A program made the position numbers and the translations under genes. DNA of 64,000 nt, taken from positions 31,682,001 to 31,746,000 of the forward strand of contig NW_027266308.1 in assembly GCF_022045235.1 (NCBI RefSeq), read 5' to 3'. This DNA is from Haliotis cracherodii. Taxonomy: Eukaryota. Positions 2,914 to 59,562 of the stretch are shown piece by piece; the first letter of the stretch is position 1; every line of letters starts with the position of its first letter. The notes beneath the pieces were generated by a model, which worked only from the letters and a program-made list of their open reading frames with translations, made no database searches and was not told the origin of the DNA.

Positions 2914-5900
2914 CCACTGGGACAAAACACCTCTACATAACTGAGAATGAGAACACTTGGTGGGAAGCTAGAAAAAACTGCAAAACGGAGCTTCAGAGTG
3001 ATCTGTACATTGTTGATACAGAACCCCTTCCTTCAGTCCTGGATGAGTTTCTTAACAACAACACATTCTACTGGGTAGGAGCCATGAGGTATTCAACATG
3101 GATATGGACAGGTGACTACTATGACGTGGAATCCATACATATGACAGTGGTGACAATAATAACACTCGTGTATGCATATATGTATATATGTTACAAGAAA
3201 TATGTATCATCAAGGAATATGTGTATTCCCTGAATATATCTAATGTCTGATTCACTCAGGGAAATTACATAATCCCTATTTATTCTGGTATTATACATAT
3301 TCCCTGATTTAACATCATGTTTCTTAGACATATTCCCTGAAATTACTTTTGAGGCTGTCATTTTGTCAAACTTGATATAAAAAAATCGAGAAGGCAAATT
3401 TATTTGACATGATAACAAATACCTTTTACTTAACTTAACAATTAGTCTTAACTGTAATCAAAACATAGGATAGAAATGAGGTTAAAATACTCAATATGAA
3501 TGCAACACCTCCCTCCTCTCAAGCATCACTGGATTTATATCTTTGACGCAGTCGCAAAGAATAAAGACAAGATTTACTGTAGTTGTTGTAACAACTCATG
3601 GTTATCATTGCCTTCAAAGAATCAGTGTTAGCATATGAAGTACAAACATATTTTAAAAACAAACGAGTTTGCAGCTGCAACAACTTGCGAAATTCAGGGT
3701 ATAAAACTGCCGACATTATGTATTACCTCACATTTTCAAGATGGAGTTAAAGGAAAATTTTCGAAAAAAAAAGTACAAGAGCTATTGTTTGTTAAGTCTA
3801 TCCTATGTTTGATGTAGCATTGTTTTGATTACAGTGAAGAGTCTGACTAATTGTTAAGTTGAGTGAAAGGTATTTGTTATCATGTCAAATACATTTGTCT
3901 TCTCATAAATAATTTGTTTTTTTTTAATCAGGTTTGACTATATAAGAGCCTCCAAAGTAATTTCAGGGCATATGTCTAAAAAAACCTTGATGTTAAATCA
4001 GGGAATATGTATAATACCTGAAATTTTTCGGGATTATGTATATTCCCTGAGTAAATCAGACATTATATATATTCCCTGAAAATTTCAGGGATTACACATA
4101 TTCCCTGATTATACATAGTCCCTGTAACATATATATCACCAAGGTGATCGTAAGAGACGACCAAACATATCGGGTGGTCAGGCTCGGTGACTTGGTTGAT
4201 TGCGTGTCATCGTACCCCGACGGCGTGGATCGTTGCTTACAATATCGACTACTGGATTGTCTGGTCAAGACTCCTTTATTTAAAGGCCGCAGTTGTATAT
4301 TTTATATTGCTGAGTTAGGCGTTAAACAACAAACAAACAATGAACATGTACTCGACTCTCTGGTTTTCTCTTTCTAAAGATGTTGTATATTTGTTTGATA
4401 TTACAGCAGATGATACCCCGCTTTACAGTTATGTCGGTTACACTAAACCAGGTTCAAACCCCAAATACTTGCTCGATAACTCTGTGTACGAGTGTCATCT
4501 TGCATGTAGAAACAAGGACAGAACGTTTGGGCTGAGCGTAAGATTCATCTTTTTTGTTTTTGGTTCGTGTGTCACTAATACTGTTTAAAGAAATACATTT
4601 AATGGAACTTTTAGCTGCGTTGTCATCCTTTCATAAGGGAACGAAACTGATAACTGAAGCATGAGAAAAAACCCAATGACTTCATTATTATACAAAGTAT
4701 CGTTCAAGCAAAGCACTATTTTATTAAGAGAATCGCCTTTCGATAAAATTACATCAGGTGTCATAAAGGTTTTCTGACTACAGTTAATAGTTAATGTTTC
4801 TTGTTGTATTTAGGGCAACAAATGCTATTGTCATAACGAGACACATGCAGCTACAGCTCCCACTGCAGTAGGGATGCAGTGTCCGGGCAACCTAGATGAA
4901 ATGTGTGGCGACGAAGATGTGATGTCAGTCTACACACTTGGTGCTGGTATGTGCGTCCCAACACGGTGTACACTGCCTGTATAGTTGTTACAGCGTCATG
5001 GTGCTCGTAAACGCTTGTTAGAGATTTTTTTAACTATAATATCTATTTCGCGCCAGTAGAAGGATTACGTATATGCTATTTTGTTGATATATCGTTTCCT
5101 TAAAGTTATGACAATGATATTTTGTTTCAGGAAACTTTCGATTTACACCGACACAACATGGGGCATGTGCTTATGCGATGGTCAATGACCCAATCTCAGT
5201 ATACCTCAACCATTACCGCAATTGTTTAACACAAAAGAGGATAATCCCATGTTATGAAAACAGTAAGTATGGACTAGGTCATACACTAACTACAAATCAG
5301 TAACCACTATACATCATATCGACAACACAAGTATTTTTTTCAATTTCGCTTGCTTCTTCAAAACGAATATTCTATACAAAGTGAAAAGAATTGCATGTAA
5401 ATTAAAAAAAGACCTAATGGGGAAGACTTCCAAAACTTGTTAAAAATTCAATCAGAATCATAGACCATTACTTTCAAGATCTAGTGTGAGGTAGTGTGAG
5501 GTTTGCATGATGAATATTCAATGAATATTTCAAACATTTTCTCCTTTCCCCTTTCTCCCAAAATATCGTTTTTATGCAGATTTCATAGTATGCCATTTGG
5601 TTAGGGTGATAAAATTAGGGTAAGGGTTACCTTTTCGCATTGTATTATGGATGAAAAAACTAACGCAGTCTGTATTGGTGGCCAAACCATATTAACTCCT
5701 GAACCTGAAAGGTAATAAACATAGACGCATCTAACTAAAATATCTCGAAAACTGGCTCTGATAACATAAAAACCCGACATAATCTCAATCTGGAGTTTTC
5801 TGATTTTTCCGACTTTGATCATGAACTTGGCAAAAAAAATGTCCCAGTCAACCAGACACGCATATGGGGGTTTGGGAATGTAGCTATGTTCTTCAATCAG

Positions 5901-8900
5901 TCAGTCCATGTACCACCCGTGTGTCATCTACTTTGTTTAGTTAATGTCAGCACTCACATTATGCTACATGTTCTCTATATCTGTGTTGTAGTATCGCAAG
6001 AAAGCAACTGTAATGGGGGCGTTTGTGTTTCCATACAAGACATCCAACAGTCATGGGTACAGGCGTATGACAAATGTCCTATAGTCAAACTGGACAATTC
6101 TACCACATGGTATCTCAAGAAACACATTCATTCAGGAGATCGGATTTGGATTGGTCTCGCATTTAAGGTCTCAAGGAAATGGATCAATGGTAGGTTCCCC
6201 CAGTTTTGCTCTTGTCCACCTGTCAATGTTAACAGTAAGATCATGGAACATGCAATTTATAACAGAATTGTATATTTATTTCAAATTATTCTTGGGGGGT
6301 ACATATCTTGACATATATGAACAACAATGCGGAAATTGCAATAAAACTCCTCAAGGTTCTTCTTACATTATTTTGACATAAATATGAGAAAGAAACAGGA
6401 CAAAACATTGCATTTGTTTCTTAAATGACAAATACAGTCTCTGATCTGTATCTTAATAGTGACAGATTTAGAATCTATTGTTATATGACGTCATTTAGTT
6501 TATGACACCATGTCGGTTGGATTGACTTTGATGCACCCACTGACGCCATAAGGCCAAATCTAACCATCAACAAAGAAGGCGTTCTTCTAAGCAGTCAAAC
6601 AACTTTCGGAGGGGTGGGGTGGGGGAGGTTACTGGGTAGAGTGTGAGATGTCCCACTTGCTCGGCAGATCAGAGAATTACATTTATTAACCTTTCTCAGA
6701 GTGTATAAAATGTGATTCTTGGTCTTATTATGTTCAGGACAATATGTTCAGTTCAGAGAACGCTACCGATATTGAAATGTTCCGGGTGAGTGTACATACA
6801 CATTATAGGTGTAAATATTTATGTATGGTAGCAAATAATATATTCCTTAAAGTTTGCAATGATTTGTGAAACCACAGTTATGTGTATCTGTGATATGTGC
6901 CTTAGATACGAATAGAATGCATTTGTAGAATGAGCCGGGGACAGTCTAGATATATACTCACAACAATGCACAATGACGTTTTCATCGCGGTTTAAATCAC
7001 TTTTCTCTTCCTATTCCCGTTGGCTTTCCTGTTATGGTAACTATATAGTTGTAGTTGTACATTACTCCGACCCTGTGAGAAAATAATAAGATGCATATCT
7101 AGTATAAGCCACATGAACAGCCGACAGACGCAGGAACTATAACAAAAATATATTTGTTAAATTGAGGATTTGTTTAACAGACAAAACATATATTTTAAAT
7201 ATTAGTAGATCCCAAGTGGTGTTCAAAGATACGTGGATATCATTGGACTCTTATGAATGGGGATAGCTAGGATTACAGAAACACACAAATAATTGTGTTT
7301 CCATGGATTTAAAGTTTTTTTCTAAAGTTGTTGTTAGTTTTGAAGCCTATTCTCAAAGGTATTAAATGCGTTTTCTATTTGGCCAGTAAGCCGCTAAGAG
7401 TTACTGTGAGTAACGTTTTACCATTTGTTGGGATAGATCGGTTTACATAAATTTATACGTCTCGAGTTTGGTTCTAAAGTTGTTGTTAATTTCAAAACCA
7501 ACTCCCAGAGGCATTAAATGCGTTTTCTATTTGGCCATAAGTCGTCAAGAGTTACTGTCTACTGGAAATGATCGAAAAGTGACGTACTAAGGGCTTGATG
7601 ATGATGATAATGTTGATGTTGGAGATTTAACGAGCACTTTCGGTTGAACCGATTTCGCACTCGGATGTTCGTAAAGTGCTGTGACATTGCGCTTTTATAG
7701 ATAACCCTGACGTCACGTCAATCACGTAACAAAACTGACAGAGACTTATTCGATTGACGAAAAACACATAAAAATGAAATATAATTAGGGTGAAGCGCTT
7801 TAATGCTTAATTTCACTGTGTTTGAATACATTTCATTCACGTTATCAGAAAATACCCTATGGCGACTTCCGACGAACTTCGCAGTCGATATGTTATCGAC
7901 CCAATGAACAGTTCTCTCGTAAGCCTAGGTCGTGAGAATTAAAAAGTTATCTCGTAAGCTTAGGATGTTGGAATTAAACAGTTCTCTCGTAAAGCTGAGA
8001 TGTCAGAATTAAACAGTTCTCTCGTAAGCCTAAGATGTGGGAATTAAAGAGCTCTCCTGTAAGCCTAAGATGTGGGAATTAAACAGTTATCTCGTTACCC
8101 TAAGATGTTGGAATTAAACAGTTCTCTCGTAAACCTAAGATCTGGGAATTAAACAGTTCTCTCATAAACCTAAGATGTGGGAATGAAACAGTTCTCTCGT
8201 AAACCTAAGATCTGGGAATGAAACAGTTCTCTCGTAAACCTAAGATCTGGGAATGAAACAGTTCTCTGGTAAGCCTAGGATGTGGGAATGAAACAGTTCT
8301 CTCGTAAGCCTAAGATGTGGGAATTAAACAGTTCTCTCGTAAACCTAAGATGTGGGAATGAAACAGTTATTTCGCAAACCTAAGGTGTGCGTATTAAACA
8401 GATTTCCCGTAATCATAAGGTGTGGGAATACAACAGCTCTTTCGTAAGCCTTAATTGTGGGAATTAAGTAGCTGTCTCATAAGCATACTGTATGGCAAAT
8501 TCATTTACATCAATTAATGTTCATCAATCCATTAAATTGCCAGGTTTCCGATACATATGTTTATATAGCTACAAAACAACACAAATGGTTTGCTAAATAT
8601 GATATGCTAAAATATTTTTTTAAAATGACAACTTGGAGATCGTCGATTACAATCGTAATTCAGCATGCGTGCATACATAATAACCTGATGAAAAATAGTC
8701 CTCATACGTCGTTACAAACAATAAGGAACAATAACCTGTGACCTCCGGGGCCAGCTCGCATGATACTGCAGCGTGTTACTATTATAGAGTGTGTTACAAA
8801 GCATTCATGCATGGCATTGAAGCAGTATGAATGAGATCATTAGAGGATCAAGTTGATTGTTTATTAGTATATTAACGACTTTTCTTCACTTTAAACTTGA

Positions 8901-11580
8901 TTGGAATATACATGGTCAAAGATGGTACTCATAAATCCTACAATTACTTTTCGTACATGTATGTTTCAAGGAAAAGACGCCAATGGATATGAGGATTACT
9001 ACCCGTTCATAAACTCACCTATACAAATGTGCCTTGCTTTGAAAAACGATGGAGCAAGGAAGCTGTACTGGGTACCGTGCTCTCTACACCTTAGTTCTAT
9101 TTGTGAAGGTAATAATTATGAGAAACTTGTACCATATGTTCAAGTGGTTTTATATTATGTAAACAATTGACTTGCCTTTGCATGTGTTTTGAGAGGTGCA
9201 GGATACGCTAATCTTTTCCCTACCACCTGGCATCATCACTATTTGGTAGTGATTCTTAAACACATGCTCATGATATACTGGGACTCGTACAATGGACTCT
9301 TCTTTTTGCAGACTGAGGAAAGGGCTCTGTCGCTTTTATTACCAAGATAATCAGAATACCATTAAGTAGAGCATGTGTGATCATGATTAAATGATAAAAC
9401 ATCATTTCAATATAAGTAGAAAGGCCACCAAATATTTTCTCACGGTTAAGGATGCGATTATTTTGTGTATGATAACGTCTATTCTGGATCTGTTCTCACT
9501 CAAAGTCACTGTCAGTCTTGCCACAGTTTTGCCACAAATCCAAATGACCTGTCCCTTTAATATATCTTCCTTTATCTAAATTATGCCAGTGAGTAGATGC
9601 TTTTTCCTGACAAAATGGTTGGCTTAAGGCCCTACCAGATGTCAACATTTAGTATGTGAGGGTAGCATTCTTCGTAAGTCTTTGTGGGTCCAATAGATAT
9701 GCCCATCAACAAATACATTCTTAAGAAAGGCTCTATTTCTTTGACAACAATGGAAAGGTATTCCTGCAATGAATGTGACATAGTGTTGTATCATTGGCAT
9801 AACTGTCGCTATGTATCTACTTGCCGCATGTATTTCACACTTCCGCAGTGGTATTACTGAACATTCTGTGACTATAATTGATCTCATGTGTTTATATCCA
9901 GTTTTCTTTTACATCCTCATCTTAGCTCCAACGTCGTCAACAACACTAGGATCGTCAAACGGAGGTATTTCTACTGAGGGTCAAGTCTCAAACCAGGATG
10001 ATGGAGTTGGTCAATCTGATACACAGACTGGTAAGCATCCACAACAGAAACCGATCCCTATCATTGTCCCATAGATATCCTCAAAGCAACAAAATTAAAA
10101 TAATGTTGAGTAAATTTAACACTTTTATTAATTTGTACAGTATATGTTTATTTCTAGGTCTGTACATAGGACTGGCTGCAGGCAGTTGTATCCTTTTGCT
10201 GATTATCATCGCTGTAGTCTGCTTTGTGCGAAGGTGAGATGTCAAACAGGCACTTCTTTCAACATTTTACAACTACTATTGATGCAAAATGTTAAGTGTA
10301 AAGGTGTCTTTCCATCTTTGAAAAAGTGATTTCTGAAATAAGACATGTTCTATATATATCATTTATCTTCCTTACATTTTATCCTAAAAAAGTCATGTGT
10401 CCATCATTTATCCTTCTGTAGCCTGCATCAATGCGTCGGTACTGTACATCAAAATTGATATGTTACACATCACGTGCTAAGTCCAGAAGAAAACATTATA
10501 AATAAACACACAGCACTACCTTAGTGATTCACACAGCAGTTACTCACAAAACGATCAGCAGTGAACAGGTAGGGTGGTGACTTATGCAGTGTTAACAGTC
10601 ACTACTGTGACAGCTGACCAATACAAAAATACTCCCCTTGGCACGCTTCATGGCCCTGTGGGGAATCCCTGTAAGAGGAGCAAACTAAAATGGGGATCAG
10701 ATGTCAGGCTCTATTGTTTTTTATATGTCAAATTATTCAATATGGTTGCTCATGCTATTACTTACTAATTTGCCATGCCCAGACATGTAATTTACAGGCA
10801 GCATTTATATAGCTTTTTGCTGTCTGCGGCTTTCAACAATATGCACTCACTCACAGAGGGTGCAGAAGTGCCAGAAACGTATGAACGTTGGTGGAAATCT
10901 CTAGGTTCTTCGGCACGATAGCTATGTTCGTGGGTTTCACTAAAGTAGTATATGTCAAGCCGTGCATCATGTTGGACTATCCTCCTACATCAAACTGACA
11001 AGCAGTGATATAACTATAACGGTTATAACGCAAACCTACTCCCTAACTATTGGAACGTATTAACTATTTATTTGTTACATATATCATTTTGATAAGCCTA
11101 TTTTACAGGCGACGAAAAATCCGTTTGGAAATAACAGATGAACAGAGGATCTTCAACACGGCCACAGAAAACATGACCTATGATATCGATGTACCAAGAG
11201 ACAATGAAGCAATTTCTGTTTCCCCAGACTTCACTCCTGTCCCAAAGGCGACAGTTAATCCCACCACCCACACTGAGAAAGCCTACATGAACCATCCTGG
11301 GACTAATGTTGAGAGTGAATACAACTATGACCACGTGGATGCGACAGAGGGAAACTACGACACCGTGCAGCAAGGGGGAAACGCGAGAACGGTAGATGAG
11401 TCGTATAGTCGCATAGGCAAGATAAACAAGAAGTTTGAAGAAGGTGCCTATGATACCACAAATACTGGGTTGGTTGTGAACAGGTTTGATGACACCTACA
11501 GCCATACGTCTGAGTCCGATAACAAAACTTCTGATTACTGTAATACAAGATCTGTTGTCAGAGATGATCTGATGTGTTAA
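2914..11580 (+). CDS. Receptor gene 1: CTLD-half/WSC/CTLD-half/CTLD/stalk/TM/Tyr-rich tail, 5' leader exon missing
   Basis: Phase-compatible GT-AG exons 2914-3111, 4407-4537, 4814-4946, 5131-5262, 5992-6189, 8971-9108, 9926-10030, 10158-10233, 11109-11580 form one open frame of about 526 aa. Motifs include TWWEARKNC..YWVG..WIW, SVYECHLAC..GLSGNKCYC..CPGNLDEMCG..SVY, WIGL, WVPC..ICE and TM IGLAAGSCILLLIIIAVVCFV. Exon-by-exon homology to genes 2 and 3. Confidence 0.85.
3184..4134. mobile_element. Foldback/MITE-like element with ~190-bp TIRs in a gene 1 intron
   Basis: 3184-3370 is the reverse complement of about 3935-4134, with internally repetitive TTCCCTGA/TCAGGGAA units and TA-rich flanks. 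The orthologous intron in genes 2 and 3 is only about 120-140 bp. Confidence 0.7.
4147..4340 (+). mobile_element. SINE-like repeat, family C (GTCGTAAGAGGCGAC...GGCGTTAAACAACAAAC)
   Basis: Homologous to 26397-26640, 57693-57888, 21890-22085(-) and 63795-64000(-). Confidence 0.7.
7909..8485. repeat. 35-bp minisatellite, about 16 copies, in a gene 1 intron
   Basis: Unit CAGTTCTCTCGTAAACCTAAGATGTGGGAATTAAA repeated head-to-tail with 35-nt period (e.g. 8119, 8154). Confidence 0.95.
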
Positions 11581-13618: not shown

Positions 13619-13799
13619 TGTTGCTGCCTTGAGTTCTTTCATTCTGACTGCCTTTTCTTTGTCTTTCTCCAGGTCCAAGGATTAGTCTTTCATGTCAGTT
13701 TTTAAAGTGGCTCTGATATTGTGGCTAAATGTGGAACGAATCTGCCATAGAAATAGACAAATCCGTGGAAGCGTCTTACTTTTGCTGGACTTACATGTC

Positions 13800-16311: not shown

Positions 16312-19300
16312 ATGTGGACTGCGAGGCTGCTTGCCTGTTACCTGCACTGTGTGTATGCAACTAGTGTCAACATATGTAAGTAAACGTCTCCACTTACTGT
16401 AGTTGTTATTCCTTTTAATGTCAATTTTTCATTTGAAGAGTTGTTATGTTTACTTTAATATGTCAGAAATATCTCAACTTGGATTTTTTTATCCGAATAT
16501 GTGGAACCACAATGATTACTAGGGGGTGTCTAAGCCTTCAGTTTCGAAACTGTCATCGTGTTAACATGCATGCAAAAGTCAGGGGTCTGTACTTCGAATT
16601 ATGTAACATTTTCCCTTTTCATCTGTGTATGGCATCTCTTTGTTAGGGCCCACGTGTCACGGTATGATATTGAATTTCACATCTGAGAATATAGTATTTT
16701 TTAAATCAAATATTCATTCAATTCATCACGCACTGTCATTCCTGTCCTTTCTCTACGTGTCGCTCCAGTGTGCATTTGGACGTGAGTAGGAATTCGTTGT
16801 CATTGTCGCTGTCTATGATTCAGTCTAAAACAGTTATTCAGTTTATAATATACATTGCCATTGCAAAACTGTATTTTCTGTAAGTGTCTCAGTTATTTCC
16901 ATTTATACCTTTGAGTGTACTTATGAACACTATGCCATCCACGTAAGTGAGTGAGTGAGTGAGTTTGGTTTAACGCCGCTTTTAACAGTATTCCAGTTAT
17001 ATCACGGCGTGTCAGCTTAATGTGGGAGGAAAGCCCGACGTGATGCAGGTCTCAGACGTTTACCACTTCGGTGAAACCCACGAGCACGGGTATGGTGCTG
17101 ACAAACCTAGAAACATAATTGGGGCAAACCGGGATTCGAACCCACAATCCTAGTTTTCTGGCGTGCCCAAGGGACGCAACTCTGCACAGCGAATCGCGGC
17201 GCCTTAGACGACTGGGCCAGCCATCCACGTAAGGAAGTAACACAATTTACTATGATGTGCTTATAAGGTAATAGGCTTTTTATCAAGGAAAATCATAATT
17301 TAGATGGGAACATTTGTTATCAGTAACAGTAAATTCATATCGAGTTTGCTGGCTAGTGAACATGCTTTGATAGGCATCGCGTTCCTAATATTACATTGAA
17401 TGGTTTCAACTGCAGTCACAGATTTTCCTCAATTCACAATCTCGGACAAAAGCTTTACAGCCATATCAAACAGCTATAAGGAAGTTATTTATCCAATCAG
17501 GACGATGATATGGTCATAAAACTGCCAGTCATGTATATCTATTTATATAATATCGAGAGCTGTGTATTCCAAAACGAATGTCTTCCCTTACATGGCAGAA
17601 TGGCATACTGACGTCAAATCAAGTGACATCCGGTGAGATATAAGCTGAGCTCGATAACTATTTATCAGTGAATGTTACCGGAGGAAGAGTACCAAGAACT
17701 GGATAAGTGCTAAAGTATCGGTTCCACGGTATCTTCATTTTGATGAAAACGATTTAACGTTGTTATGCCATTTGTCTTGCAAACTCACTGAGTTACACAG
17801 TAGGGCAGTGCTGCACGGGAATAAGATTCATCAATATGTCCTCATCTGATTCTACTCTGTTTGAAAGAGTTTCAAGGTCATATCTGAATTTGTAACTACA
17901 ATTGGAAAACCACTTAATGCAATGCATTATTTTTATAGAAGACCCATAACAGAACCAATTTAAAGGACCATTGTATAATACTGTGACTCATTTGAAGCTT
18001 AATATTATGTAACGTGTATACATTTTACACACAGTGACGTTATGTTAATTGCCAAGCGAGGGTATTCTTATTTGCGGGGCACGGGTGGTCTGAGCCGACG
18101 CAATTCGCTGTGCAGATCTGCGTCGCTTTGGCCCGCTATAAACCTTTATTGTGGACTCCCGCTTCGCCCTGATCACTTCGGGTGTTCGTCCACTATCAAG
18201 CTGATACGCCGTTACATTAATGGAATACAGTTCAAAGCGGCGTTAGATGAAACCCACTCACTCGCTCTGTATTTGATTAAGATGCGATCCGATCCGATCC
18301 TTTAAACATGAGCTAGATATTGTAAATGTAATTAATTGACTTTAGTGAAATGTTACTTTTGGGTGTATGTTCCGGTACATTGTATAAAATGTCAGTGAGC
18401 CCGTATCATTATTTCACTTCTATATTATTCCTTTTATGACAACTGAGTTCACAATACTGTACTATGCCTCCTTAATTTGGAAGTTTCAAACGACTTCAGT
18501 TTGGTTTTAAATCTACTTTCTAAATCTATAACACAGTGGTCGTGTTGCCTAATTACGCAGAAGAAAACAAAACATGATAAAAGCGTAAAAACTGAGGTGT
18601 GGTAGAAAGAACTCCAACTTGAGTAGTAAGAAATAAAAGTTTTCAGATCAAGGTCAACATAAATCAACAAATGTGATATATGTAAAAACACAATTGCAAT
18701 CAATTTATATGAGACAACACTAATTGACATCGGATAGGAAAGCCTTAAATGGTGTGGACCGATAATGGATACGTTACTAAATTATATGTCATTAATCATT
18801 TGCAGCCACGGAGACAAAACACATCTTTATAAACGAGGAGGAAAACAACTGGTGGGATGCTCGGAAAAACTGTAAGATGGCGCCGGAGAGAGATCTGTAT
18901 ATTTCTGATGCAGAGTTCCTCCCTCCACTCGTGGATGAAAACCTACACAGCAACACTTCCTACTGGGTAGGAGCCATGAGGTATTCAACATGGATATGGA
19001 CAGGTGAGTCTGTAGAAGTAGTTCCCACATCTAAATAGAAAATAGATATGCATAAAAGCTGTGTATGCATTTATCTTAACTTATAGTTAATCTGTTGTTG
19101 ATGCCTCTTATGTATGATGTTACAGAAGATGGTACCCCGCTCTACAACTATAATGGATACAATTATACAACTCCAGGAAGCAGCCCCAAAAGCAACTTGT
19201 CTTACAACTCCGTTTTCGAGTGTCACCTCAAATGTCCATCCAACCGTATAGTAGGCCTGAGCGTAAGGAGAATGCATGTTTTTGGTGACACAATACTATT

Positions 19301-22300
19301 GATCCCAAAGTGGTAAAAAGAATTAAATTACGTATGTACATTTACTTCTGTTTTGAAAACCTACAAACGACACACGAAGGACGCATGAGAGAAGGATACA
19401 GATGTGTTGAAGTAATGTTGTACAAACACATCATATGCTAATAAAAGAACCGCTGTGCAGTAAAAAGATCATAATTTCCTATCGTAAAGTGTTTTTTTAT
19501 GACAGGGATACTCAACTCATCATTGTTTCGTTATTTATAGGGGCAAAGGTGTTATTGTCTCGAAAATGCGCATACAGTAACAAATACCAGTGCAGGTGGG
19601 ATGCAGTGTCCTGGCAACCCAGAAGAAATGTGTGGCAACGACGATGTCATGTCAGTCTACACACTAGGTACTGCTGTGTGCGCATTTACACGTGTATTAC
19701 ATAAAAAAATCGGAGAGTATTGTTATAAGGTTATACTCAAAGGCAACAATCTTCTTGTGTTATGTGTGTTGTCACTTTTATCTATGTTAGAGGGGTTCAC
19801 ATTGATATACTGATGGTCAGGACTCTTAACTTCCGGTTTCTCTTAGTTTGTTTTCTTGTCAACATTATAGCCATATGGTAATATAGTTTACAGTAACGTG
19901 TAATGTACGTAATGCTCAGGATGTAAACGATATATTGAGTCATAAATAACTTGTGTATGTTTGTGTGACTGTATGTTACTTTCGCCTTTTTGTAGGAAAC
20001 TTCAGCTTTAAACCCAGGAGGACTGGAGTATGTGCTTATGCAGAAAAAAATACAACTACAATCTCCATAAAACCAGACTATTACTACAAGTGTGTAACAC
20101 AAAGGCGAAGATTTGCATATTATTCCCACAGTAAGTATGGCCGACGTTGTCGTCTGCTTCACACAAGTTTGATCACATCCCTCTCTTACATAATCAGTAT
20201 TTCCTGCAGCCTGAAATTATTTACCAAAGGGAATTCAACAAATGTAAACTTTAATACCCCAATATAAACCTAAACAAAACTACTCATGTCAACCCAAGCT
20301 CGTAACTGTCACGTGCACATTGCATGGTCCTGCCAAGCACAGAAAAATAATCGCGTTCTGGCATTAAAACAAATAAATACAGTAACTAGAGCAGCAAATA
20401 CTGGTTTCAGAATGTATTTCAATTGTTGACGTTTCCGAATGAACCGAAACTTCCTTCACGCAAACAGTCCACGATAAGTAACACAATACACATCTACTAA
20501 ACATAGAGATCTTGTATTGTCACGGACTGTAGTAAATTATTACTATGATTAATTTAACAATATTCGTATAATCTCATGGATTGTGTTTTTCGATGCCTTC
20601 TGGTTTTACCTACGACGTTATTGGATATCGTAATTCATATGTTTGTAGATACTCACCACTGGAACTGTAATGGGAGCGTTTGTGTGTCGGCGGGAAACAA
20701 CTCGCAGTCATGGATCAACGCTCATAAATCAAATGATCTGATCAAACTAATCTCCTCCACTGCAAGAGATATCCGCAATATTCCAGGATATTATAAATTT
20801 TGGATTGGGCTTGTACTAAAATTCACAAGGAAATGGACTGATGGTACGTTTCTAATACCTGCCAGGTTTGAATGGTATACTACTGAAAAATGAAACGCAT
20901 ATCTGAATTCAACACATTTTATATAAATAACTAATTCATTTGGTGATAAATGTGTCTCACATAATTATTGTCTGTGTATGAAGAATTCATTAATCATTAC
21001 AAAATTAGCAATATCACTGGTCACAAAGCTCAAAGATGTAACACCTCAATATCGTGTATGACCACCATTGGAATCAATAACAACTTGACACCGTAAAACC
21101 ATCCACATGAACAGTTTGGGGATGTTATTCCACTCAAGTCCTGCAATGTTTCAGGATCAGTGTTTGGGTTCAGATCTGGTGATGTATAGGAATGTTGTTC
21201 TAGGCTACTCAGTTTTGAAACAAGAGTTGTCGTCTTTGTCATGTTGACAAGCGACGTAACATTGGTTCATGAATGGAATGACATGTGTCTGAAGTGGAAG
21301 TTGACAATAATGGCGTGTCAGATCAAAGCCACATGTGTGAGCTCTGGTTTCTACTTCCTTCAATGATTTCTGACGATTTGGTCGCAAATACTGCGCAGAC
21401 CTGGAACAACAGAAGTGGTAGAGGGGGCCTTTAAGAAACGGTTGCGGAGGCGAGGTACGCGGACAAAATGATCCTGGGTGGACGTGGTCACCCGTGGTCT
21501 TTCAGAACGAGGCAAGTCACACGCTCTTCCTTGAGCCTGGTAACGGTGCCAAAGTAGTCCTACGGTGATCTGCGAAACGATCTGTAGCGTTCCCCAGCAT
21601 CCAAACAGACAATGGCATTGTTTCGTACATCCTCATCATGTCCTGACGTGACTTCCAACGTTCACCGCTCCTCGGGCCCCGCACGTTTGTTTTGTGAGAT
21701 TCCATCTTTATGATGCTACTTTGGTTCTGACACAAACTATGTGTATTCGGATGGTGAATGAAAACCACTATGTGTGCAAACCACGATATGGACATTGCGA
21801 AACCATTTATTGATAATGATACCCAACTCTAAATAGCTTACTTAGTTTTTTATTTTGGAATATTAGTGTTAAGAGACATGGAACGGATAAAAAAGATTTA
21901 CGCCACACTCAGCAATAGTACAGCTATCTGACAGAGGTCTGTACATAATCCAGACAACCCGGTTACGGATGTCATAACCTTTGAGATTGGGATACGATAA
22001 CATGCATCAACCAGTTCTGACCACTCGATCCTGTTAGTCGCCTCTCACCAGAAGTATGTGGTGCTGAAGACCAATTCTAATCCCGAGTGAGTGAGTGAGT
22101 ATGGTATTACGCCGCTTTTAGCAATATTCCAGAAATATCACTGCGGGGGACACCAGAAATGGGCTTCACAAAAAATCACTAATTTCAGTATAGCACTATT
22201 GAAAATGACACTGGAAAATGGCTAAATCAAATGGCTTAATTGTATAAATGGCATAAATGATTTAGTAATATTATGAATTTCAAGGCTTTTAACATATGCC

Positions 22301-25103: not shown

Positions 25104-25581
25104 GGCCACTAATTAGCATAACACATGATCTGCCGTCAGAGATAACTGAAATCGTGGTAATGATGTATTTGCTAGCAGAGATCACGATGGTACAGGTAGG
25201 AGTGTCTGGTCGTACAAAGGGAAATACTTTTAGGACATGAGAAATATAACTGTACAGTAAGATGGGATTATCTTTCCAGTGTTGCTGGATAAAACTAGTT
25301 TGATTGAAGCAAAAGTCTCTCTTTACAGGTCAAAGAGCCATATCTTGACGGAAGTTACGTAACAATTATGGAATAAATTTAAGTTAGTACTTTTAAGGTA
25401 AAGAGTGGTTAAAGTTAGTTTTTTTTATTAGTGATGCAGTTGAACATTGAACTATTACAAGTAAAAACGAATTTCTCAAAAGGTTGTCTCCTGTAGGAGT
25501 CAGTTAAAACAAAACTTCAAAAAAAGTGAAGTGGTTAATGCTGACGTTAAGTTCTTTCAATCTTTATATATCTTTTCATTG

Positions 25582-25862
25582 CGGGGGCACCGGTGGCCCA
25601 GTCGTATAAGGCGCCGCGATTCGCTGTGCAGAGTTGCGTCCCTTCGGCACTCCAGAAACCTATGATTGTGGGTTCGAATCCCGGTTCGACCCGAATATGT
25701 TTCTAGGTTTGTCAGCACCATACCCGTGCTCGTGGGTTCCCCCTGAAGTGGTAAACGTCTGAGACCTGCTTTCCTCCCACATTAAGCTGACACGCTGTGA
25801 TATAACTGGAATACTGTTAAAAGCGGCGTTAAACCCCACTCACTCACTCACTCACTCACTCT
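25582..25862 (+). mobile_element. tRNA-derived SINE, family B, downstream of the gene 2 stop
   Basis: TSD TCTTTTCATTGC and (CTCA)n tail. The empty site is in the gene 3 paralogous region near 43244. Confidence 0.85.
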
Positions 25863-26396
25863 TTTCATTGCGAAAAGATGCGTAGGTGTATTGAGATGTA
25901 CGACGATGATAAAATCAATCATACATTTGCCGTGTTAGCTACCCCGGAAAAAAGTACAGTGTAGGTTGAATGTCTTGAGTCACAGAATAGACTGACGATT
26001 GTAAAATATCAGACACATATTCCAAACAATTAAGAGTTTTCGAGTTTTGGAATTCGGAAAATGTAGATGAAAATGAAATACACATTAATCTAGATGTCAT
26101 TTTATATAATAATTTAAGAGAAACAGTTTATCTCGATGTTTACACATTAGCCCCCTAGTAAAAGTCTTCTGTATGACTTTTTTGATCGAAGGGCATTTTG
26201 AATATTTAAAACTTTAAGAAAATTTTCACTAATCTTCAATCTTATGAACTATATTTACTTGCTTTTTTATTTGTTGTTTTAACACCACAATCAACAGTAG
26301 TAAAGTCATATTACGACTTGCTTTAAAATGTCGAGCCTAGGCAACATTATTCACATCTGATTACTTTTTTAGTATTTGTTTTGTTGTTGTTTTTTA

Positions 26397-26640
26397 CCCG
26401 TGAAGATCCGGGGTAGAATAACTCTTCGGCAACCCGTGCTGGCAGTAAAAGGCTACTATGCTTGTCGTAAAAGGCGACTAACGGGATCGGGTGGTCAGGC
26501 TCGCTGACTTGGTTGATGCATGTCATCGTATCCCAACTGCGTGGATCGATGCTCATGATGTCAGTCACAGGATTGTCTGGCCGAGACCGCTGTCATATGG
26601 CTGGAATATTGTTGAATGCGGCGTTAAATAACAAACAAAA
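26397..26640 (+). mobile_element. Family C SINE-like repeat, near full length
   Basis: CCCGTGAAGATCCGGGGTAGAATA...GTCGTAAAAGGCGACTAACGGGATCGGGTGGTCAGG...GCGGCGTTAAATAACAAAC. Confidence 0.75.
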
Positions 26641-40600: not shown

Positions 40601-42772
40601 CGCTCCAGAAATCATTCACAAATATAGCCTTTTTTTATAAATTGTCAGATATCCTTATTCATTTTCACCAAACAACTTATCGAATTATTGCAGATCAGGT
40701 TTAACATTTGGTATGTACGGAATGTTGGATGTTTATACGAGACTTTTTCACTTGTAATATCACCTGCTCCATCATTTCTAAAATAGCAACGTCATCTTTG
40801 TCAACAGTTTCCAGGACTCATCCCTCTCATCCCACCACAGACGTTCCGCCAGCTGTTGATAGTCAGATGGGTAAGTGGTCACTGCAGAGGTAACCCTGTC
40901 CTAAAAGAACTCGCTCGCTACGCTAAAGAACAGGGCTCGATTCCTAACGTTTAATATAAGTTCCTTATGTTTAAATAGTGTTAAAAGTGGTGTAAAATCT
41001 ATCATCACAATTACCAATTGTATTATCAACAGTCCACGTGAAAGCGATAAAGAATTCAGTTTCGCGTATCTCTATTCCTTACAATATTGAAAATTGTTTG
41101 TATGTAGTAGAACTCAATATTCCACAAAGCGACTTCGCTCAACGTTAGTGAGTGAGTATGAGTTTGCGCAGATTGTAGCAATATTCCAGTAATATCATGC
41201 GGGGAAACCAGAAATGGGCCCTAAGCTCTACAACTGTTGTTAGTGTATGCTAAAATACCAAAAGCACAATCATCTTAGCTCTGATTGGAACAGTCCCCTT
41301 GTCATGATTGCATGACATATTATTATATATTGTGTACTTTTATAGTGGTAGCAGTTTTCGGTGTGCATTCCATAGTGATCGTTTACTTCAGTATAGTATA
41401 CATACTTACTGGACATGCCTAATATTTCTTGTGTAAACTGGTACGTGCGTTTAACATATTTATCAAGCTTTTGACATCTAACATTTCCTTTTTACCAGGT
41501 GTAATCATAGGGCTGGCTGCAGGCTGTGTGGTTTTCTTCCTTGTAGTCGTCACTCTTGTATTTCTTCTGCAAAGGTGAGGTTCCCAGCAGCATTTCTTTA
41601 AATAGCAAAAAAGAAACCAGAATCTAAAGAATGAATTCATTTATCAGATACCATTCTTGGCATGTAACTTGTTATGTTTTTACATTAATGTGATGCTTAT
41701 TTAAATTTTTGAAGCAACTGTTTTGTGAAATAACTCGTAGCAATGCTGTATATTCATGTGTGAAAATGATATGTTACACGCACATATCGGGCAAACATTG
41801 AAGCAAGCACCTTGAACACATTCAACACTAGTGCATCCATTCACAATTTCGCCAAATTCATATGACCTGTAAATGAGTAGCATGACAATTTTGTCAGTGT
41901 CGAGGACGGGATACAAGCCCCGACACATTTCGGTCTACTAGTCATGATACATCGGGAAGCAATGGAGTAGTAAAAAAGCATAATTCCACAGTATACCATA
42001 CTATACAAGTTGATATCGAGAAGCATTCAATCATCACATTCAATCATGTTGCAAATGCTGTTTCAGACAACGCAAACTCTATTTGGATAGAAAAGATACG
42101 AATCAACAGGTGAACCTCAACCCGCAAACAGAAAACACGACCTACGACGGTCTCGATGTTCCGAGAGACAATGGCGCATACTCTGTTATAACCCCCGACA
42201 CAATTGACGGGAAGCCATTCACTCCCTCTGTTCCAACGGCGACAGTAAACCCCAATACTCACACTGAGAAATTCTACGTGAACCATCCTGGGACTGATGT
42301 TGAGAAGATGTCCAATTCCCTCTCAATGCCCAGTAAACAACACACCGACATGCCAAGAGGAAAGCCCCACATGCATCTCTCCGGACCCGACTACGACACA
42401 GCTGAATGTATTCTACAGTATAGAAGCGGAGATGGAGGGTACACTGGACTGGATATATCTGCAGTAGGTACTGGTGTAGCCAACTCCGACGAGGGTGTTC
42501 AGTACCACACCCTCGAGAAGCGCAGCTCCCCGGGAAGGGATAAAAGTGATGCTGGTTTGTATGACCCCACGGAAGCGGCAGAGGTAAACTACGACACCTC
42601 ACAGCAAGGGGGGAACGCCAGAAAAGTAGATGACTCGTACAGTCACATAGGCGCGATAGGCAAGGGGTTTGAAGAAGGTGCATATGATGTCGCTAGTGCT
42701 GGGCCTGTTGTGATCAGGTTGGATGACACCTACAACCATGCGAATGAGACCAATCATGAGGCCACTGATTAG
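31624..42772 (+). CDS. Receptor gene 3, same architecture as gene 2, about 622 aa
   Basis: Exons 31624-31687, 36818-37009 (GC donor), 37148-37278, 38462-38594, 38936-39070, 39581-39784, 40213-40356, 40787-40870, 41499-41574, 42067-42772 total 1869 nt in frame. TM is VIIGLAAGCVVFFLVVVTLVFLL. Confidence 0.83.
34950..36480 (+). mobile_element. Decayed Tc1-like transposon interrupted by a Helentron-type insert
   Basis: REDRFLLIAARRHHVVTA before the insert. MDDNVRPHRARIV...SPDLNPIEHIWKEL after it (Tc1 DD34E region). Confidence 0.8.
35333..36169 (+). mobile_element. Non-autonomous Helentron/HINE-like element carrying about 4 x 179-bp tandem repeats
   Basis: 5' TTTTTATCCCCCGC subterminal IR, (GTCC)n microsatellite, and 179-bp units starting near 35416, 35595, 35774, 35953. 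3' GCGGAGGATG plus hairpin GTGCTCTCAGAGCAC. Confidence 0.75.
37536..37696 (-). mobile_element. Family A SINE with internal deletion
   Basis: GAGT tail, family A body and TSD GGCATTCT. Confidence 0.75.
37723..37900. repeat. Inverted repeat with ~80-bp arms, resembling a Penelope-like terminal repeat
   Basis: 37723-37801 is the reverse complement of 37821-37900 (ACGGTGTAAGAA..TCGAAACGT.GCT.AATG.AATAAAC). Confidence 0.65.
37921..38410 (+). pseudogene. Decayed duplicate WSC exons inside gene 3
   Basis: Frameshifted copy of the first WSC exon (NYDGC...HLQCTTTRTTGLS|GT, about 37963-38072) and truncated copies of the second WSC exon start (about 37927 and 38338-38409). Confidence 0.75.
39831..39993 (+). 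mobile_element. Family A SINE
   Basis: Full A/B boxes and TSD TAAATTGTAAAA. Confidence 0.85.
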
Positions 42773-51088: not shown

Positions 51089-52530
51089 ATGTGGACGGCG
51101 AGGCTGCTTGTCTGTTACTTGCACTGTGTATATGCAACTAGTGTCAACATATGTAAGTAAACGTTTTCACATGATGTCCTTTAAAGTCATTTTTCCGCTA
51201 AATGAAATATGAGATATTGATGAATAATGAATATTCGCAAAGAACAATGAAGAACGAAGCATATTGTTTTATCAGGACGTCATTTCTGGAGATTCAAACA
51301 TATTTTATGACGTCAGTATATAGGACAACGTTATTTTTTTAGAGGGAAGTGTCTAGTGATGTGTTCCCCATAGATGTAACAGGGCAACCCAGATAAACGC
51401 ATTGACCGAACGATAACATCCAAAAGTTAGATAGATATGTCAATCGGTATTAGGAGCAAAATTACAGTAATCGACGCAAAAATTGTGAGAATATTTTCGA
51501 AAGACCAATATTAACCCGTCATTAAGTCGTCACGCTTGTATTTCTTCTGCAAAGGTGAGGTTCCTAGCAGCACTTCTTTAAATAGCGAAAAGAAACCAGA
51601 ATCTGAAGAATGAATTCGTTTGTCAGATACCATTCCGGACATGTAATTTGTTAATTTTTGTATTAATGTCGGGGCTTGTAATGCTTATTTAAAGCTTTGA
51701 AGCAACAAGTTTGATAAATAAGACAATTTCTACATGTATCACTGTTCTTATATTTTAACAGGAATGTTTACCCATAAGTGTTTTATCTTTAGCCATCTCT
51801 ACTGCTATTGATATAGCAATGCTGTACATTCCTGTGTGAAAATGATATGTTACACGCACGTATCGGGCAAACATTGAAGTAACCACATTCCACACTAGTG
51901 CATCCATTAACAAACATATGTTTTCGCCAAATTCATACCTATAAATGAGTAGCATGACAATTTTGTCAGTGTTGAGGACAGGATACAAGCCCCGACACAT
52001 TTCGGTCCACTGGTCACAATACATCGGGAGGCAATGGAGTAGTGATATAGCATACTTCCATAGTATACCATACTATAAAGTTGATATCAAGAAGCATTTG
52101 AATAACGGTCACGACTGCCGCCAGTGATATGACAGTCACGTGAACTCATTAAATATGGATTCCTCTAAAATCCGACCGAGATGACCAGTGGGGCCATTTT
52201 CCTTCAAAGCTGTTCCGCAAATTCCTTTAAGTTGTAATATATAACACTTAAAAAGAACAATTGGAACTTAGTAACTACTTATTGTGCTAAAAAGAATCAA
52301 TAAAGTAAGCATAACTAATTTGAAGTAATTATTAAGGGCATGTTTGTACATCACATTCAGTCATTTTGCAATGCTGTTTCAGAGAACGGAAACTCCGTAT
52401 GGATAGAAAAGATACGAATCAGCAGGTGAAATTCAACCCGCCAACAGAAAACACGACCTACGACGGTCTCGATGTTACGAGAGACAGTGGAGCATATTCT
52501 GTTTTAACCCCAGAACATTCTAGAACATGA
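51089..52530 (+). pseudogene. Receptor copy 4, ectodomain deleted and tail truncated (pseudogene or possible 79-aa ITAM microprotein)
   Basis: Intact leader exon 51089-51152 and 3' part of the TM exon 51525-51554 with donor GTGAGG. Tail exon 52383-52530 reads ERKLRMDRKDTNQQVKFNPPTENTTYDGLDVTRDSGAYSVLTPEHSRT*. No ectodomain exons lie between. Confidence 0.75.
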
Positions 52531-59357: not shown

Positions 59358-59498
59358 ATTTGAACAGACCATAGTACAAAAGATACATCAACAGGATCTG
59401 GGATACAGTCAGTTTTCCGCTCTGTTTTCCGAATCTGCGTTCTACTTCCCTGTTGGGTTCACCACAACGAGTAGATGCATGGCACACAGGCCGGAGAT

Positions 59499-59562
59499 AT
59501 GTGGACCGCGAGGCTGCTTGTCTGCTACCTGCACTGTGTATATGCAACTAGTGTCAACATAT
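59499..59562 (+). CDS. Leader (signal-peptide) exon of a fifth receptor copy, downstream exons not seen in the window
   Basis: MWTARLLVCYLHCVYATSVNI plus phase-1 donor GTAAGT. The intron-1 start is homologous to genes 2 and 3 up to about 60250. Confidence 0.65.

What the first reader, a model, noticed from the sequence alone, without database searches (positions are those of the whole stretch)
2914..59562. Tandem array of CTLD-WSC-CTLD receptors with diversified signalling tails: a candidate invertebrate paired immune-receptor locus
Seen: five related units, namely three full receptors, one ectodomain-deleted copy and one leader exon. They share exon phases and encode type I membrane proteins. 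The ectodomains are clearly divergent and the tails differ in ITAM/ITIM content. Established: CTLD and WSC are carbohydrate- or ligand-recognition folds, and clustered receptors with variable ectodomains and Tyr-motif tails are the layout of vertebrate paired receptors and invertebrate allorecognition or polymorphic TM clusters. Inference: a birth-and-death pattern-recognition or allorecognition family in a mollusc. I do not recognise it as a named family.
Basis: partly seen in the sequence, partly recalled or inferred. Interest (0 to 1): 0.88.

Follow-up and report, generated by a model that had tools for sequence, protein, structure and literature searches.

The report
Abalone lectin-like membrane receptor gene cluster
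The window holds a real tandem cluster of abalone-only genes for single-pass membrane proteins with a lectin-like/WSC head and a tyrosine-rich tail. They look like signalling receptors, but nothing yet shows that they are immune or "paired" receptors.

Summary

**What is there**
- The window is Haliotis cracherodii, C45:31,682,001-31,746,000.
- It carries three intact 10-exon genes on the + strand (A, B, C), a deletion remnant (D) and a lone leader exon (E).
- Splice sites and exon phases are conserved, and all three spliced frames are open.
- My models match RefSeq "uncharacterized protein" models P0021 (gene A) and P0001 (gene C), apart from in-frame alternative splice sites.
- RNA contigs support two junctions.
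- E is probably the first exon of a fourth gene (F), 41 kb further on.

**What the proteins look like**
- Order: signal peptide, lectin-like/WSC head, Ser/Thr stalk, TM helix, then a disordered acidic Tyr-rich tail.
- In AlphaFold models the first and last half-CTLDs form one domain, so the two CTLDs appear segment-swapped, with WSC in the hinge.
- Cysteine co-loss agrees with this.

**Distribution and evolution**
- Relatives were found only in Haliotis.
- B, C and F arose by about 18 kb segmental duplication, with mosaic dS that suggests gene conversion.

**The paired-receptor reading fails its defining tests**
- Ectodomains differ more than tails.
- No TM helix has a charged residue.
- B and C carry the ITAM-like and ITIM-like motifs together.

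Immune function is untested.

The parts
2914..11580 (+). Gene A (RefSeq-type protein P0021, 547 aa). Its leader exon lies outside the window at -3772..-3709.
   Evidence: Exons: 2914-3111, 4407(4410)-4537, 4814-4940(4946), 5131-5262, 5992-6189, 8971-9108, 9926-10030, 10158-10233, 11109-11580. Splice sites were read. The frame is open. It is identical to P0021 except for two in-frame alternative sites. The leader was found.
16312..25103 (+). Gene B (633 aa model).
   Evidence: Exons: 16312-16375 (leader), 18806-19003, 19126-19262, 19541-19667, 19996-20130, 20649-20843, 22782-22922, 23380-23544, 23707-23782, 24440-25103. It is 88% identical to the H. rufescens protein P0018. A duplicated copy of the last-exon acceptor lies about 146 nt upstream, around 24294-24365.
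31600..42772 (+). Gene C (= RefSeq protein P0001, 623 aa).
   Evidence: Exons: 31624-31687 (leader; RefSeq starts at an ATG 24 nt upstream), 36818-37009 (GC donor), 37148-37278, 38462-38588(38594), 38936-39070, 39581-39784, 40213-40356, 40787(40808)-40870, 41499-41574, 42067-42772. An RNA contig with no mismatches covers 38935-39065. Its other 61 nt fit the depth seen in bin 38400-38599, which holds the end of exon e3 (inferred; no joint was listed).
51089..52530 (+). Unit D: a deletion remnant (leader, 3' stub of the TM exon, truncated tail exon).
   Evidence: The leader is 51089-51152. The TM stub is 51527-51554 and encodes only VVTLVFLLQ after a stop. The tail is 52383-52530 and stops after YSVLTPEHSRT. 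Splicing leader directly to tail gives TAG. A cryptic acceptor at 51527 would give a 79-aa ORF that keeps YDGLDVTRDSGAYSVL (52459-52506). This is untested.
59499..59562 (+). Leader exon E, probably exon 1 of gene F (other exons at window 100,887-114,921, outside the window).
   Evidence: It encodes MWTARLLVCYLHCVYATSVNI with a GTAAGT donor. No other leader lies between it and F's next exon. F's H. rufescens orthologue P0020 starts with this leader.
36818..40356 (+). Ectodomain exons of gene C: e1 (CTLD N-half), e2-e3 (WSC), e4 (CTLD C-half), e5 (CTLD N-half), e6 (CTLD C-half).
   Evidence: Pfam per exon gives the Lectin_C N-half and the end of WSC. A PDB profile search gives the same parts. 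The AF2 model has pLDDT 70-90 over residues 35-345. Wsc1 7pz2 matches with TMt 0.65. CTLD templates match with Z 11-13 and span residues 30..345.
24516..24563 (+). ITAM-like motif YDGLDVPRDNGAYSVI in the tail of B (same motif in C at 42143-42190).
   Evidence: Found by regex. The chance per shuffled tail is 0.01-0.02. It is kept in the H. rufescens C orthologue P0017. A related form occurs in P0005 and P0025.
24867..24884 (+). ITIM-like motif VQYHIL in the tail of B (VQYHTL in C at 42497-42514).
   Evidence: The chance per shuffled tail is 0.31. The same alignment column reads [VI]QY[HF][IVT]L in four Haliotis species.
18784..31273 (+). One copy of the ~18 kb segmental duplication (partner at 36795-49886; a partial third copy at 51525-59146).
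   Evidence: Self-blastn identities: 68% over the mid-ectodomain, 75-79% over the flanks, 86% over the tail, 88% over the leader region.

Best explanation
The window is part of a gene cluster on one Haliotis cracherodii chromosome. The cluster encodes a Haliotis-restricted family of type I membrane receptors.

Each protein has, in order:
- a cleavable leader;
- a compact Cys-rich head made of two C-type-lectin-like domains and one WSC domain;
- a Ser/Thr-rich (probably O-glycosylated) stalk;
- one uncharged TM helix;
- a long, acidic, disordered tail with conserved tyrosine motifs.

Proposed mechanism (inferred):
- The head binds a ligand outside the cell, either a glycan or a protein. The canonical Ca2+/sugar triads EPN/QPD and WND are absent.
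- Tail tyrosines are then phosphorylated and recruit SH2-type partners.
- In B and C these sites include an ITAM-like and an ITIM-like site.

Predicted fold: the first half-CTLD (exon e1) pairs with the last half-CTLD (e6). The two middle halves (e4+e5) form the second, circularly permuted domain, and WSC sits in the hinge.

Evolution of the array: tandem ~18 kb segmental duplication (B, C, F), gene conversion of the 5' and 3' ends, and decay (D).
For: Shown:
- Three open spliced frames with conserved phases and splice sites.
- Identity to RefSeq models.
- RNA contigs: a 92%-identical contig starts at the homologue of the predicted tail acceptor. 39 of the 40 variant positions listed carry gene F's base. 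A zero-mismatch contig covers C exon e4 and runs 61 nt further. Depth places those 61 nt at the end of e3.
- Fold: AF2 head pLDDT 70-90, tail pLDDT 21-31.
- Wsc1 WSC is the top Foldseek hit, with TMt 0.65.
- CTLD templates match at Z 11-14 with 100-117 residues at rmsd 2.1-3 Å. They always span from e1 to e6, in both gene A and gene C models.
- Linear Foldseek CTLD alignments either cover only 51 columns (rmsd 1.8-2.1) or have rmsd 7-14 Å.
- Cys215 (e4) and Cys247 (e5) are lost together in the B/C clade. Cys44 (e1) and Cys329 (e6) are kept in every sequence that covers them.
- P0005 lacks the WSC and joins e1 directly to e4.
- Tail: Y-S-H, Y(D)(V/T) and DDTY are nearly invariant across the whole family. 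ITAM-like and ITIM-like motifs are conserved in subclades.
- Family limits: only Haliotis hits in 1.84 billion representatives and in three word-based searches.
- About 15 exon-1 matches in the genome, all on contig C45.
- Duplication and mosaic divergence; tree.
Against: - No direct evidence of ligand binding, phosphorylation or tissue of expression.
- In this window only one junction of gene C has RNA support, and that is inferred from depth, since no joint was listed.
- Exons e5, e6 and TM of C had no contigs.
- Pfam scores for the window's own genes are at or below the gathering cut-offs: Lectin_C 15.7-23.4 bits against 22.6, WSC 15-20.5 bits against 27.8.
- The swapped topology rests on two AlphaFold models with shallow alignments (18-20 sequences, one genus) and on the first and last aligned residues only. 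By linear sequence e5+e6 looks like an ordinary CTLD.
- Short Tyr motifs arise easily: P(ITIM-like) is 0.31 per shuffled tail. They flip between close species: H. rufescens B has YDGF and C has VQYHTF.
- Pairwise dN/dS is about 0.5, with no clear positive selection.
Confidence: 0.65

Rival explanations
1. One reading: a paired activating/inhibitory innate immune receptor locus. Related ectodomains would be coupled to opposite ITAM or ITIM tails.
For: - The genes are clustered and duplicating.
- ITAM-like and ITIM-like motifs are present and vary between copies.
- In H. rufescens the B orthologue keeps only the ITIM-like site and the C orthologue only the ITAM-like site.
- D could encode an ITAM-only stub.
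- The best structural matches include NK-type and myeloid CTLD receptors: NKp80, Dectin-1, CLEC5A, KLRG1.
Against: - In B and C the tail is among the most conserved parts and ectodomain exons e2-e6 the most diverged, the reverse of paired receptors.
- The TM helices have no charged residue for adaptor pairing.
- B and C carry both motifs in one tail, and A has none.
- No immune-tissue expression data exist.
Confidence: 0.12
2. A non-immune surface receptor for adhesion, matrix or cell-surface glycan sensing, endocytosis or mechanosensing. Comparable layouts are layilin/chondrolectin (type I CTLD proteins) and yeast Wsc1 (WSC head, Ser/Thr stalk, TM, tail). The YxxΦ sites would act as sorting signals.
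For: - The layout (head, Ser/Thr stalk, TM, tail) matches these proteins.
- The top Foldseek hit is the Wsc1 mechanosensor domain.
- There are many YxxΦ sites: YSVI, YDGL, YSHI, YHIL.
- The most conserved tail motifs (YSH, DDTY, YxN) are not ITAM or ITIM.
- Gene A has 1:1 orthologues in four species.
Against: - The family is genus-restricted and fast-evolving. Orthologues in two close species are only 86-94% identical.
- Copy gain and loss is unusual for housekeeping adhesion receptors.
- There is no sequence similarity to the tails of layilin or Wsc1. The search was Pfam only, with no hit.
Confidence: 0.2
3. A polymorphic self/non-self or gamete/larval recognition locus (allorecognition-like).
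For: - Variable ectodomains in a tandem cluster.
- Fast divergence between species.
- Abalone are known for rapidly evolving recognition proteins (from general knowledge, not tested here).
Against: - No polymorphism or haplotype data could be obtained.
- Pairwise dN/dS is about 0.5.
- Abalone are solitary and not known to fuse tissues (general knowledge).
Confidence: 0.05

Closest known systems
Vertebrate NK-cell and myeloid C-type-lectin-like receptors (Dectin-1, CLEC-2, NKp80, KLRG1, Ly49; NK gene complex)
   Same: - CTLD fold without the Ca2+/sugar triads.
- They are the best structural matches, at Z 11-14.
- The genes are clustered and duplicating.
- The tails carry Tyr motifs of ITAM, hemITAM or ITIM type.
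   Different: - Those are type II proteins with one CTLD and short N-terminal tails. These are type I, with two CTLDs plus a WSC, a mucin-like stalk and C-terminal tails of about 155-235 aa (the window's genes).
- Both motif types sit in one tail, and no TM helix has a charged residue.
- No sequence relationship exists beyond the fold.
Polycystin-1 (N-terminal WSC next to a C-type lectin domain) and bivalve CTL proteins with WSC domains (PMC10140915)
   Same: WSC and CTLD are combined in one extracellular region. The combination has been noted in molluscan CTL repertoires.
   Different: - Here the WSC sits inside the hinge between half-CTLDs rather than beside a complete CTLD.
- The rest of the protein is unrelated.
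- No bivalve or other non-Haliotis relative was found.
Yeast Wsc1 cell-wall sensor; Kremen
   Same: The WSC fold matches (7pz2 TMt 0.65; Kremen hits). Wsc1 shares the overall layout of Cys-rich head, Ser/Thr stalk, single TM helix and cytoplasmic tail.
   Different: - The window's genes score below the Pfam WSC cut-off, and they have six rather than the typical eight WSC cysteines.
- CTLDs are added.
- The tails are unrelated.
Layilin, chondrolectin and the CD93/thrombomodulin group (type I CTLD membrane proteins)
   Same: Type I topology with an N-terminal CTLD and a signalling or adaptor-binding tail. The CD93 CTLD is among the structural matches.
   Different: - Those have a single, contiguous CTLD and no WSC.
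- They are single-copy conserved genes.
- Their tail motifs differ.
Loop-swapped CTLD dimers (snake-venom factor IX/X-binding protein, rhodocetin, BDCA-2)
   Same: Part of the CTLD after strand β2 is exchanged between two CTLDs. These proteins appear among the sequence and structure matches.
   Different: - There the swap is between two chains and involves only the long loop.
- Here it is predicted within one chain and involves the whole C-terminal half, with a WSC in one hinge.
- This is predicted only, not solved.

Membership tests
C-type lectin-like domain (Pfam PF00059 / CTLD fold) | A sequence match to Lectin_C above the gathering score. | tested here: inconclusive
   Exon e1 of A scores 23.4 bits against a cut-off of 22.6. 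B scores 15.7 and C 17.7, both below it. Whole P0001 gives no Lectin_C hit. Paralogues P0010 (27.0) and P0016 (29.6) pass. The PDB profile search matches CLEC4, CD69 and IX/X-bp at E 6e-6 to 1e-2.
C-type lectin-like domain (Pfam PF00059 / CTLD fold) | The CTLD fold with the C1-C4 and C2-C3 disulfide pattern. | tested here: met
   AF2 models of A and C match about 50 CTLD structures at Z 11-14 over 100-117 residues. The cysteines sit at the expected positions. The C1-C4 pair appears to link e1 with e6. This is a prediction, not a solved structure.
Ca2+-dependent carbohydrate-recognition domain (classical C-type lectin) | EPN or QPD plus WND residues of Ca2+ site 2. | tested here: not met
   None of these triads is present. 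Before the C3 cysteine the sequences read YWVPC, YWIPC, YWLPC and YRNC, YYKC, YYAC (translations).
WSC domain (PF01822) | A sequence match above the gathering score, and the WSC fold. | tested here: inconclusive
   The window's genes score 15-20.5 bits against a cut-off of 27.8. Paralogue P0010 passes at 29.5 bits. At fold level Wsc1 7pz2 is the top Foldseek hit (prob 1.00, TMt 0.65, 90 columns), followed by Kremen. The profile hit to 7pz2 has E 6e-5.
Paired (activating/inhibitory) immune receptors | Closely similar ectodomains with opposite tails. | tested here: not met
   Between B and C the tail is 86% identical (dS 0.09), while exons e2-e6 are 56-69% identical (dS 0.29-0.71). Both tails carry the same motifs.
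Paired (activating/inhibitory) immune receptors | Activating members have a short tail and a charged TM residue that pairs with an ITAM adaptor. | tested here: not met
   The TM helices are LYIGLAAGSCILLLIIIAVVCFV, VIIGLAIGNAVFLLIVIGLVFLL and VIIGLAAGCVVFFLVVVTLVFLL. None has a charged residue.
ITAM | YxxL/I-x6-8(12)-YxxL/I in a cytoplasmic tail. | tested here: met
   B, C and D match with a spacer of 8. The chance per shuffled tail is 0.01-0.02. The motif is absent in A and broken (YDGF) in the H. rufescens B orthologue. This is a pattern match only.
ITAM / ITIM function | Phosphorylation and binding of Syk-type or SHP-type SH2 domains. | not testable with these tools
   This needs biochemistry.
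ITIM | [SIVL]xYxx[ILV] in a cytoplasmic tail. | tested here: met
   B has VQYHIL and C has VQYHTL. The same column is kept in four species. The pattern is loose: P = 0.31 per shuffled tail.
Birth-and-death multigene family | Tandem duplicates, lineage-specific copy gain and pseudogenised remnants. | tested here: met
   There is an 18 kb segmental duplication and the D remnant. B, C and F form a clade that the tree leaves unresolved against a single H. rubra/H. asinina lineage. Mosaic dS also points to gene conversion.

The most novel reading that the evidence does not exclude
The head would be a previously undescribed fold arrangement: two C-type-lectin-like domains that exchange their C-terminal halves within one chain (equivalently, a circularly permuted CTLD plus a WSC nested inside another CTLD). 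It would serve as the variable ligand-binding module of an abalone-specific innate receptor family. The family's tails would combine ITAM-like and ITIM-like sites and would be re-tuned by single substitutions between sister species.
Probability: 0.25. Interest if true: 0.75.

Novelty: new variant of a known kind. Interest (0 to 1): 0.5.

Why it matters
Lectin-like membrane receptors with tyrosine-motif tails are central to vertebrate innate immunity, but few have been defined in molluscs.

This cluster offers three things:
- a compact, well-defined gene family for testing whether ITAM/ITIM-style signalling operates in a gastropod. The species is critically endangered and has been hit by an infectious disease, withering syndrome (general knowledge);
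- a structurally unusual predicted head (segment-swapped CTLDs with an embedded WSC), which disulfide mapping or a crystal structure could check;
- a worked example of how segmental duplication, gene conversion of the gene ends and deletion shape such a locus.

If the proteins turn out to be adhesion or sorting receptors, the result is still a clean annotation of genes now labelled 'uncharacterized'.

Tried and rejected
Searches for relatives outside Haliotis
- Exhaustive phmmer of exon e1 against 1.84 billion representatives found only Haliotis family members, a few unnamed Logan contigs and two spurious bacterial proteins.
- Three word-based searches found only Haliotis. These used P0001, a family profile, and the tail of P0010. 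The profile search did not even recover some of its own members, so its blank is weak.
- ESM Atlas neighbours scored no higher than 0.82, which is chance level.

RNA evidence
- The only runs offered were three contig sets of uncertain type.
- Their exon-and-repeat-only coverage fits RNA. The main contig turned out to come from gene F, not C.
So D, the B alternative acceptor, and the leader junctions could not be tested.

Selection
- Pairwise dN/dS gives about 0.5 overall. Only e4 of B against C exceeds 1 (1.18, 45 codons), too few codons to count.
- Protein-level orthologue divergence is spread over head and tail alike.

Literature
- No paper on this family was found.

Sequence handling
- Joined (spliced) models were assembled only inside local scripts from window coordinates. 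They were used for frame checks, dN/dS, motif counts and a tree row for gene B.
Full-length searches and folds used the database proteins P0001 (gene C) and P0021 (gene A).
- Gene B was searched exon by exon only.

Not used
- Complex prediction: complementing CTLD halves would be expected to dock whichever pairing is true.

Full report

Yes. Six-frame stop-free segments compared with each other show three co-linear sets of + strand segments: 2.9-11.6 kb, 18.8-25.1 kb and 36.8-42.8 kb. There is also a short tail-like piece at 52.3 kb.

Reading the boundaries codon by codon gave the same nine post-leader exons in all three sets, with canonical splice sites. The one exception is a GC donor after the first CTLD exon of C.

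A 64-nt leader exon occurs four times in the window, ending at 16375, 31687, 51152 and 59562. It encodes MWTARLL[AV]CYLHCVYATSVNI, has a GTAAGT donor in phase 1, and is about 95% conserved.

Donor phases from the leader onward are 1,1,0,1,1,1,1,1,2 in every gene. Joining the exons in a local script gives open frames of 525 aa (A, without leader), 633 aa (B) and 620 aa (C).

**2. Independent support for the gene models**

A phmmer search with exon e1 of B returned P0001 (623 aa). It is gene C, apart from an upstream ATG and two in-frame alternative splice sites. P0021 (547 aa) is gene A. Both are NCBI 'uncharacterized protein [Haliotis cracherodii]' on a 70.6 Mb contig. This agrees with the window's place, C45:31,682,001-31,746,000, in a 1.18 Gb genome.

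Three contig sets carrying the same species label cover exons and repeats but not introns, as RNA would.
- One contig (933-2459 nt, depth 66-179) matches C's tail exon from 42068. The predicted exon start is 42067.
- That contig then runs 107 nt further 5' into sequence unlike the genome, so it is spliced there.
- 39 of the 40 variant positions listed, and both 3-nt gaps, are those of gene F. So this contig shows expression of F and use of the homologous acceptor.
- A zero-mismatch contig covers C exon e4 (38935-39065). Its remaining 61 nt fit the depth in the bin that holds the end of e3. No joint was listed, so the e3/e4 junction is inferred.
- Exons e5, e6 and TM of C had no contigs.

**3. 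The units beyond the three genes**

- Gene A's leader lies 3.7 kb before the window.
- D keeps a leader, the last 28 nt of the TM exon and 148 nt of the tail exon. It ends in a stop after YSVLTPEHSRT.
- Splicing D's leader straight to its tail gives TAG. A cryptic acceptor at 51527 would give a 79-aa product with YDGLDVTRDSGAYSVL. I could not test this.
- E is the only leader between D and gene F, whose exons lie at window 100,887-114,921. F's H. rufescens orthologue P0020 starts with this leader. E is therefore probably F's first exon, with a 41 kb intron.
- A more distant paralogue, Z, lies at -13.6 to -5.5 kb. About ten further exon-1 matches lie on the same chromosome at 39, 47, 48.5 and 49.4-49.5 Mb.

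**4. What the proteins are**

Pfam on single exons finds the N-half of Lectin_C in e1 and the end of WSC in e3. Whole paralogues P0010 and P0016 pass the Lectin_C cut-off, and P0010 also passes the WSC cut-off.

A family profile against PDB sequences matches three parts:
- e1 to the N-halves of CLEC4-type CTLDs;
- positions 100-186 to yeast Wsc1;
- e5+e6 to whole CTLDs (CD69, factor IX/X-binding protein, Ly49).

AlphaFold models of C and A give a confident head (pLDDT mostly 70-90), one TM helix and a disordered tail.

The canonical EPN/QPD and WND sugar/Ca2+ residues are absent. These are therefore lectin-like domains, not classical lectins.

**5. Predicted topology of the head**

By sequence, e4 is a CTLD C-half that follows the WSC. 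In paralogue P0005 the WSC is missing and e1 runs straight into e4. So the WSC is an insert in the hinge after strand β2.

In both models every CTLD template aligns 100-117 residues at rmsd 2.1-3 Å (Z 11-14) over a range running from the start of e1 to the end of e6.

Foldseek's linear CTLD alignments behave differently. They either cover only 51 columns at rmsd 1.8-2.1 Å, or cover 69-82 columns at 7-14 Å. No contiguous stretch forms a whole CTLD in the model.

The simplest reading is that e1 pairs with e6 and e4 pairs with e5.

The cysteines agree:
- Cys215 (e4) and Cys247 (e5) are lost together in the B/C clade.
- Cys44 (e1) and Cys329 (e6) are kept in every sequence that covers them.
- This is the expected pattern if the disulfides are 44-329 and 215-247.

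This remains a prediction. It comes from shallow, single-genus alignments, and I saw only the first and last aligned residues, not coordinates.

**6. The tails**

The tails are acidic (D+E 28-36), with 9-13 tyrosines.

Across the whole family the nearly invariant features are Y-S-H, a Y in E/D-x-A-Y-D-V/T, and D-D-T-Y. Longer members add DYYNT (a YxN site) and a C-terminal ISxA.

| Motif | Where found | Chance per shuffled tail |
|---|---|---|
| ITAM-like, YDGLDVPRDNGAYSVI | B and C; D keeps a variant, YDGLDVTRDSGAYSVL | 0.01-0.02 |
| ITIM-like, VQYH[IT]L | B and C | 0.31 |

- Gene A has neither motif.
- The ITIM-like column is kept in four species.
- In H. rufescens the B orthologue reads YDGF and the C orthologue reads VQYHTF. 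Each loses one motif by a Leu-to-Phe change.

Phosphotyrosine signalling is a reasonable inference. ITAM or ITIM function is not shown.

**7. How the array evolved**

B with its flank and C with its flank are about 18 kb direct duplicates. D and the region up to about 59.1 kb are a partial third copy.

Divergence between B and C is mosaic:

| Region | dS |
|---|---|
| e1 | 0.12 |
| tail | 0.09 |
| e2-e6 | 0.29-0.71 |

At the DNA level:

| Region | Identity |
|---|---|
| leader region | 88% |
| tail | 86% |
| non-coding flanks | 75-79% |
| mid-ectodomain, introns included | 68% |

This pattern fits gene conversion or exchange at the gene ends, or an older or exchanged middle. It does not fit selection on coding sites alone.

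Overall dN/dS is about 0.5. Only e4 exceeds 1 (1.18), on 45 codons.

In the tree, A has one-to-one orthologues in four Haliotis species. B, C and F each have an H. rufescens orthologue and form one well-supported clade with a single H. rubra/H. asinina lineage. The order of branching within that clade is unresolved.

**8. Interpretation**

The family is best described as a Haliotis-restricted set of type I lectin-like/WSC receptors with phosphotyrosine-type tails, evolving by duplication, conversion and decay.

The 'paired receptor' label fails its defining tests:
- ectodomains less alike than tails;
- no charged TM residue;
- both motifs in one tail.

An immune role is possible. The evidence for it is the fold kinship to NK and myeloid CTLD receptors, the motif content, the genus restriction, and fast divergence (86-94% identity between sister-species orthologues). 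But it is untested. An adhesion, sorting or sensing role fits the layout equally well.

**9. Limits**

- Polymorphism and copy-number variation were not examined.
- Joined spliced sequences were built only inside local scripts and were not sent to any search or fold tool. Gene B was searched exon by exon.
I reached the first, second, fourth and fifth before seeing those notes, and tested them as described above.

Noticed in passing
outside the window: window coordinates 100,887-114,921 (loci L018, L019, L021): Gene F is a fourth full paralogue. Between its CTLD exons and its tail exon it has about nine tandem stalk-like exon copies, repeating roughly every 1-1.9 kb (104.6-112.6 kb). This is either a much longer mucin-like stalk or a set of alternative exons. 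F is the copy that the RNA contigs show as expressed.
   Followed up: partly
outside the window: window coordinates -13,640 to -5,528 (loci L013, L014): Z is a more distant paralogue, about 40% identical. It has the same exon order and lies directly upstream of gene A's leader.
   Followed up: partly
window 24217-24483: There is a ~160 bp tandem duplication around the acceptor of B's last exon. The upstream copy (TGTTTCAG|A, ORF 24294-24365) would end the protein about 20 aa after the TM helix, giving a possible tail-less isoform.
   Followed up: partly
window 535-882 (-) and 36042-36401 (+): Fragments of Tc1/mariner-type transposases: HTH_29/HTH_Tnp_Tc3_2 at the first site and DDE_3 at the second. 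The second lies in intron 1 of gene C, next to a 179-bp tandem repeat at 35416-36117 (3.9 copies).
   Followed up: partly
window 13031-13191, 13461-13619, 37553-37695, 39830-39996, 59193-59356: A short interspersed repeat of about 160 bp, in both orientations. It has very high depth in the RNA contig sets (up to about 5e5 summed depth at 39800-39999). One copy sits just upstream of leader E and replaces the sequence found upstream of the other leaders.
   Followed up: no
window 7907-8467: A 35-bp minisatellite (16 copies, 84% matches) inside the intron between e5 and e6 of gene A.
   Followed up: no
window 1775-2051, 16943-17219, 25582-25859, 29408-29672: Another repeat family of about 275 bp, 75-94% identical between copies, scattered between the genes.
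   Followed up: no
window 37010-37011: The intron after C's first CTLD exon has a GC donor (ACAG|GCGAGT) where A and B have GT. The RefSeq model uses the same junction.
   Followed up: partly
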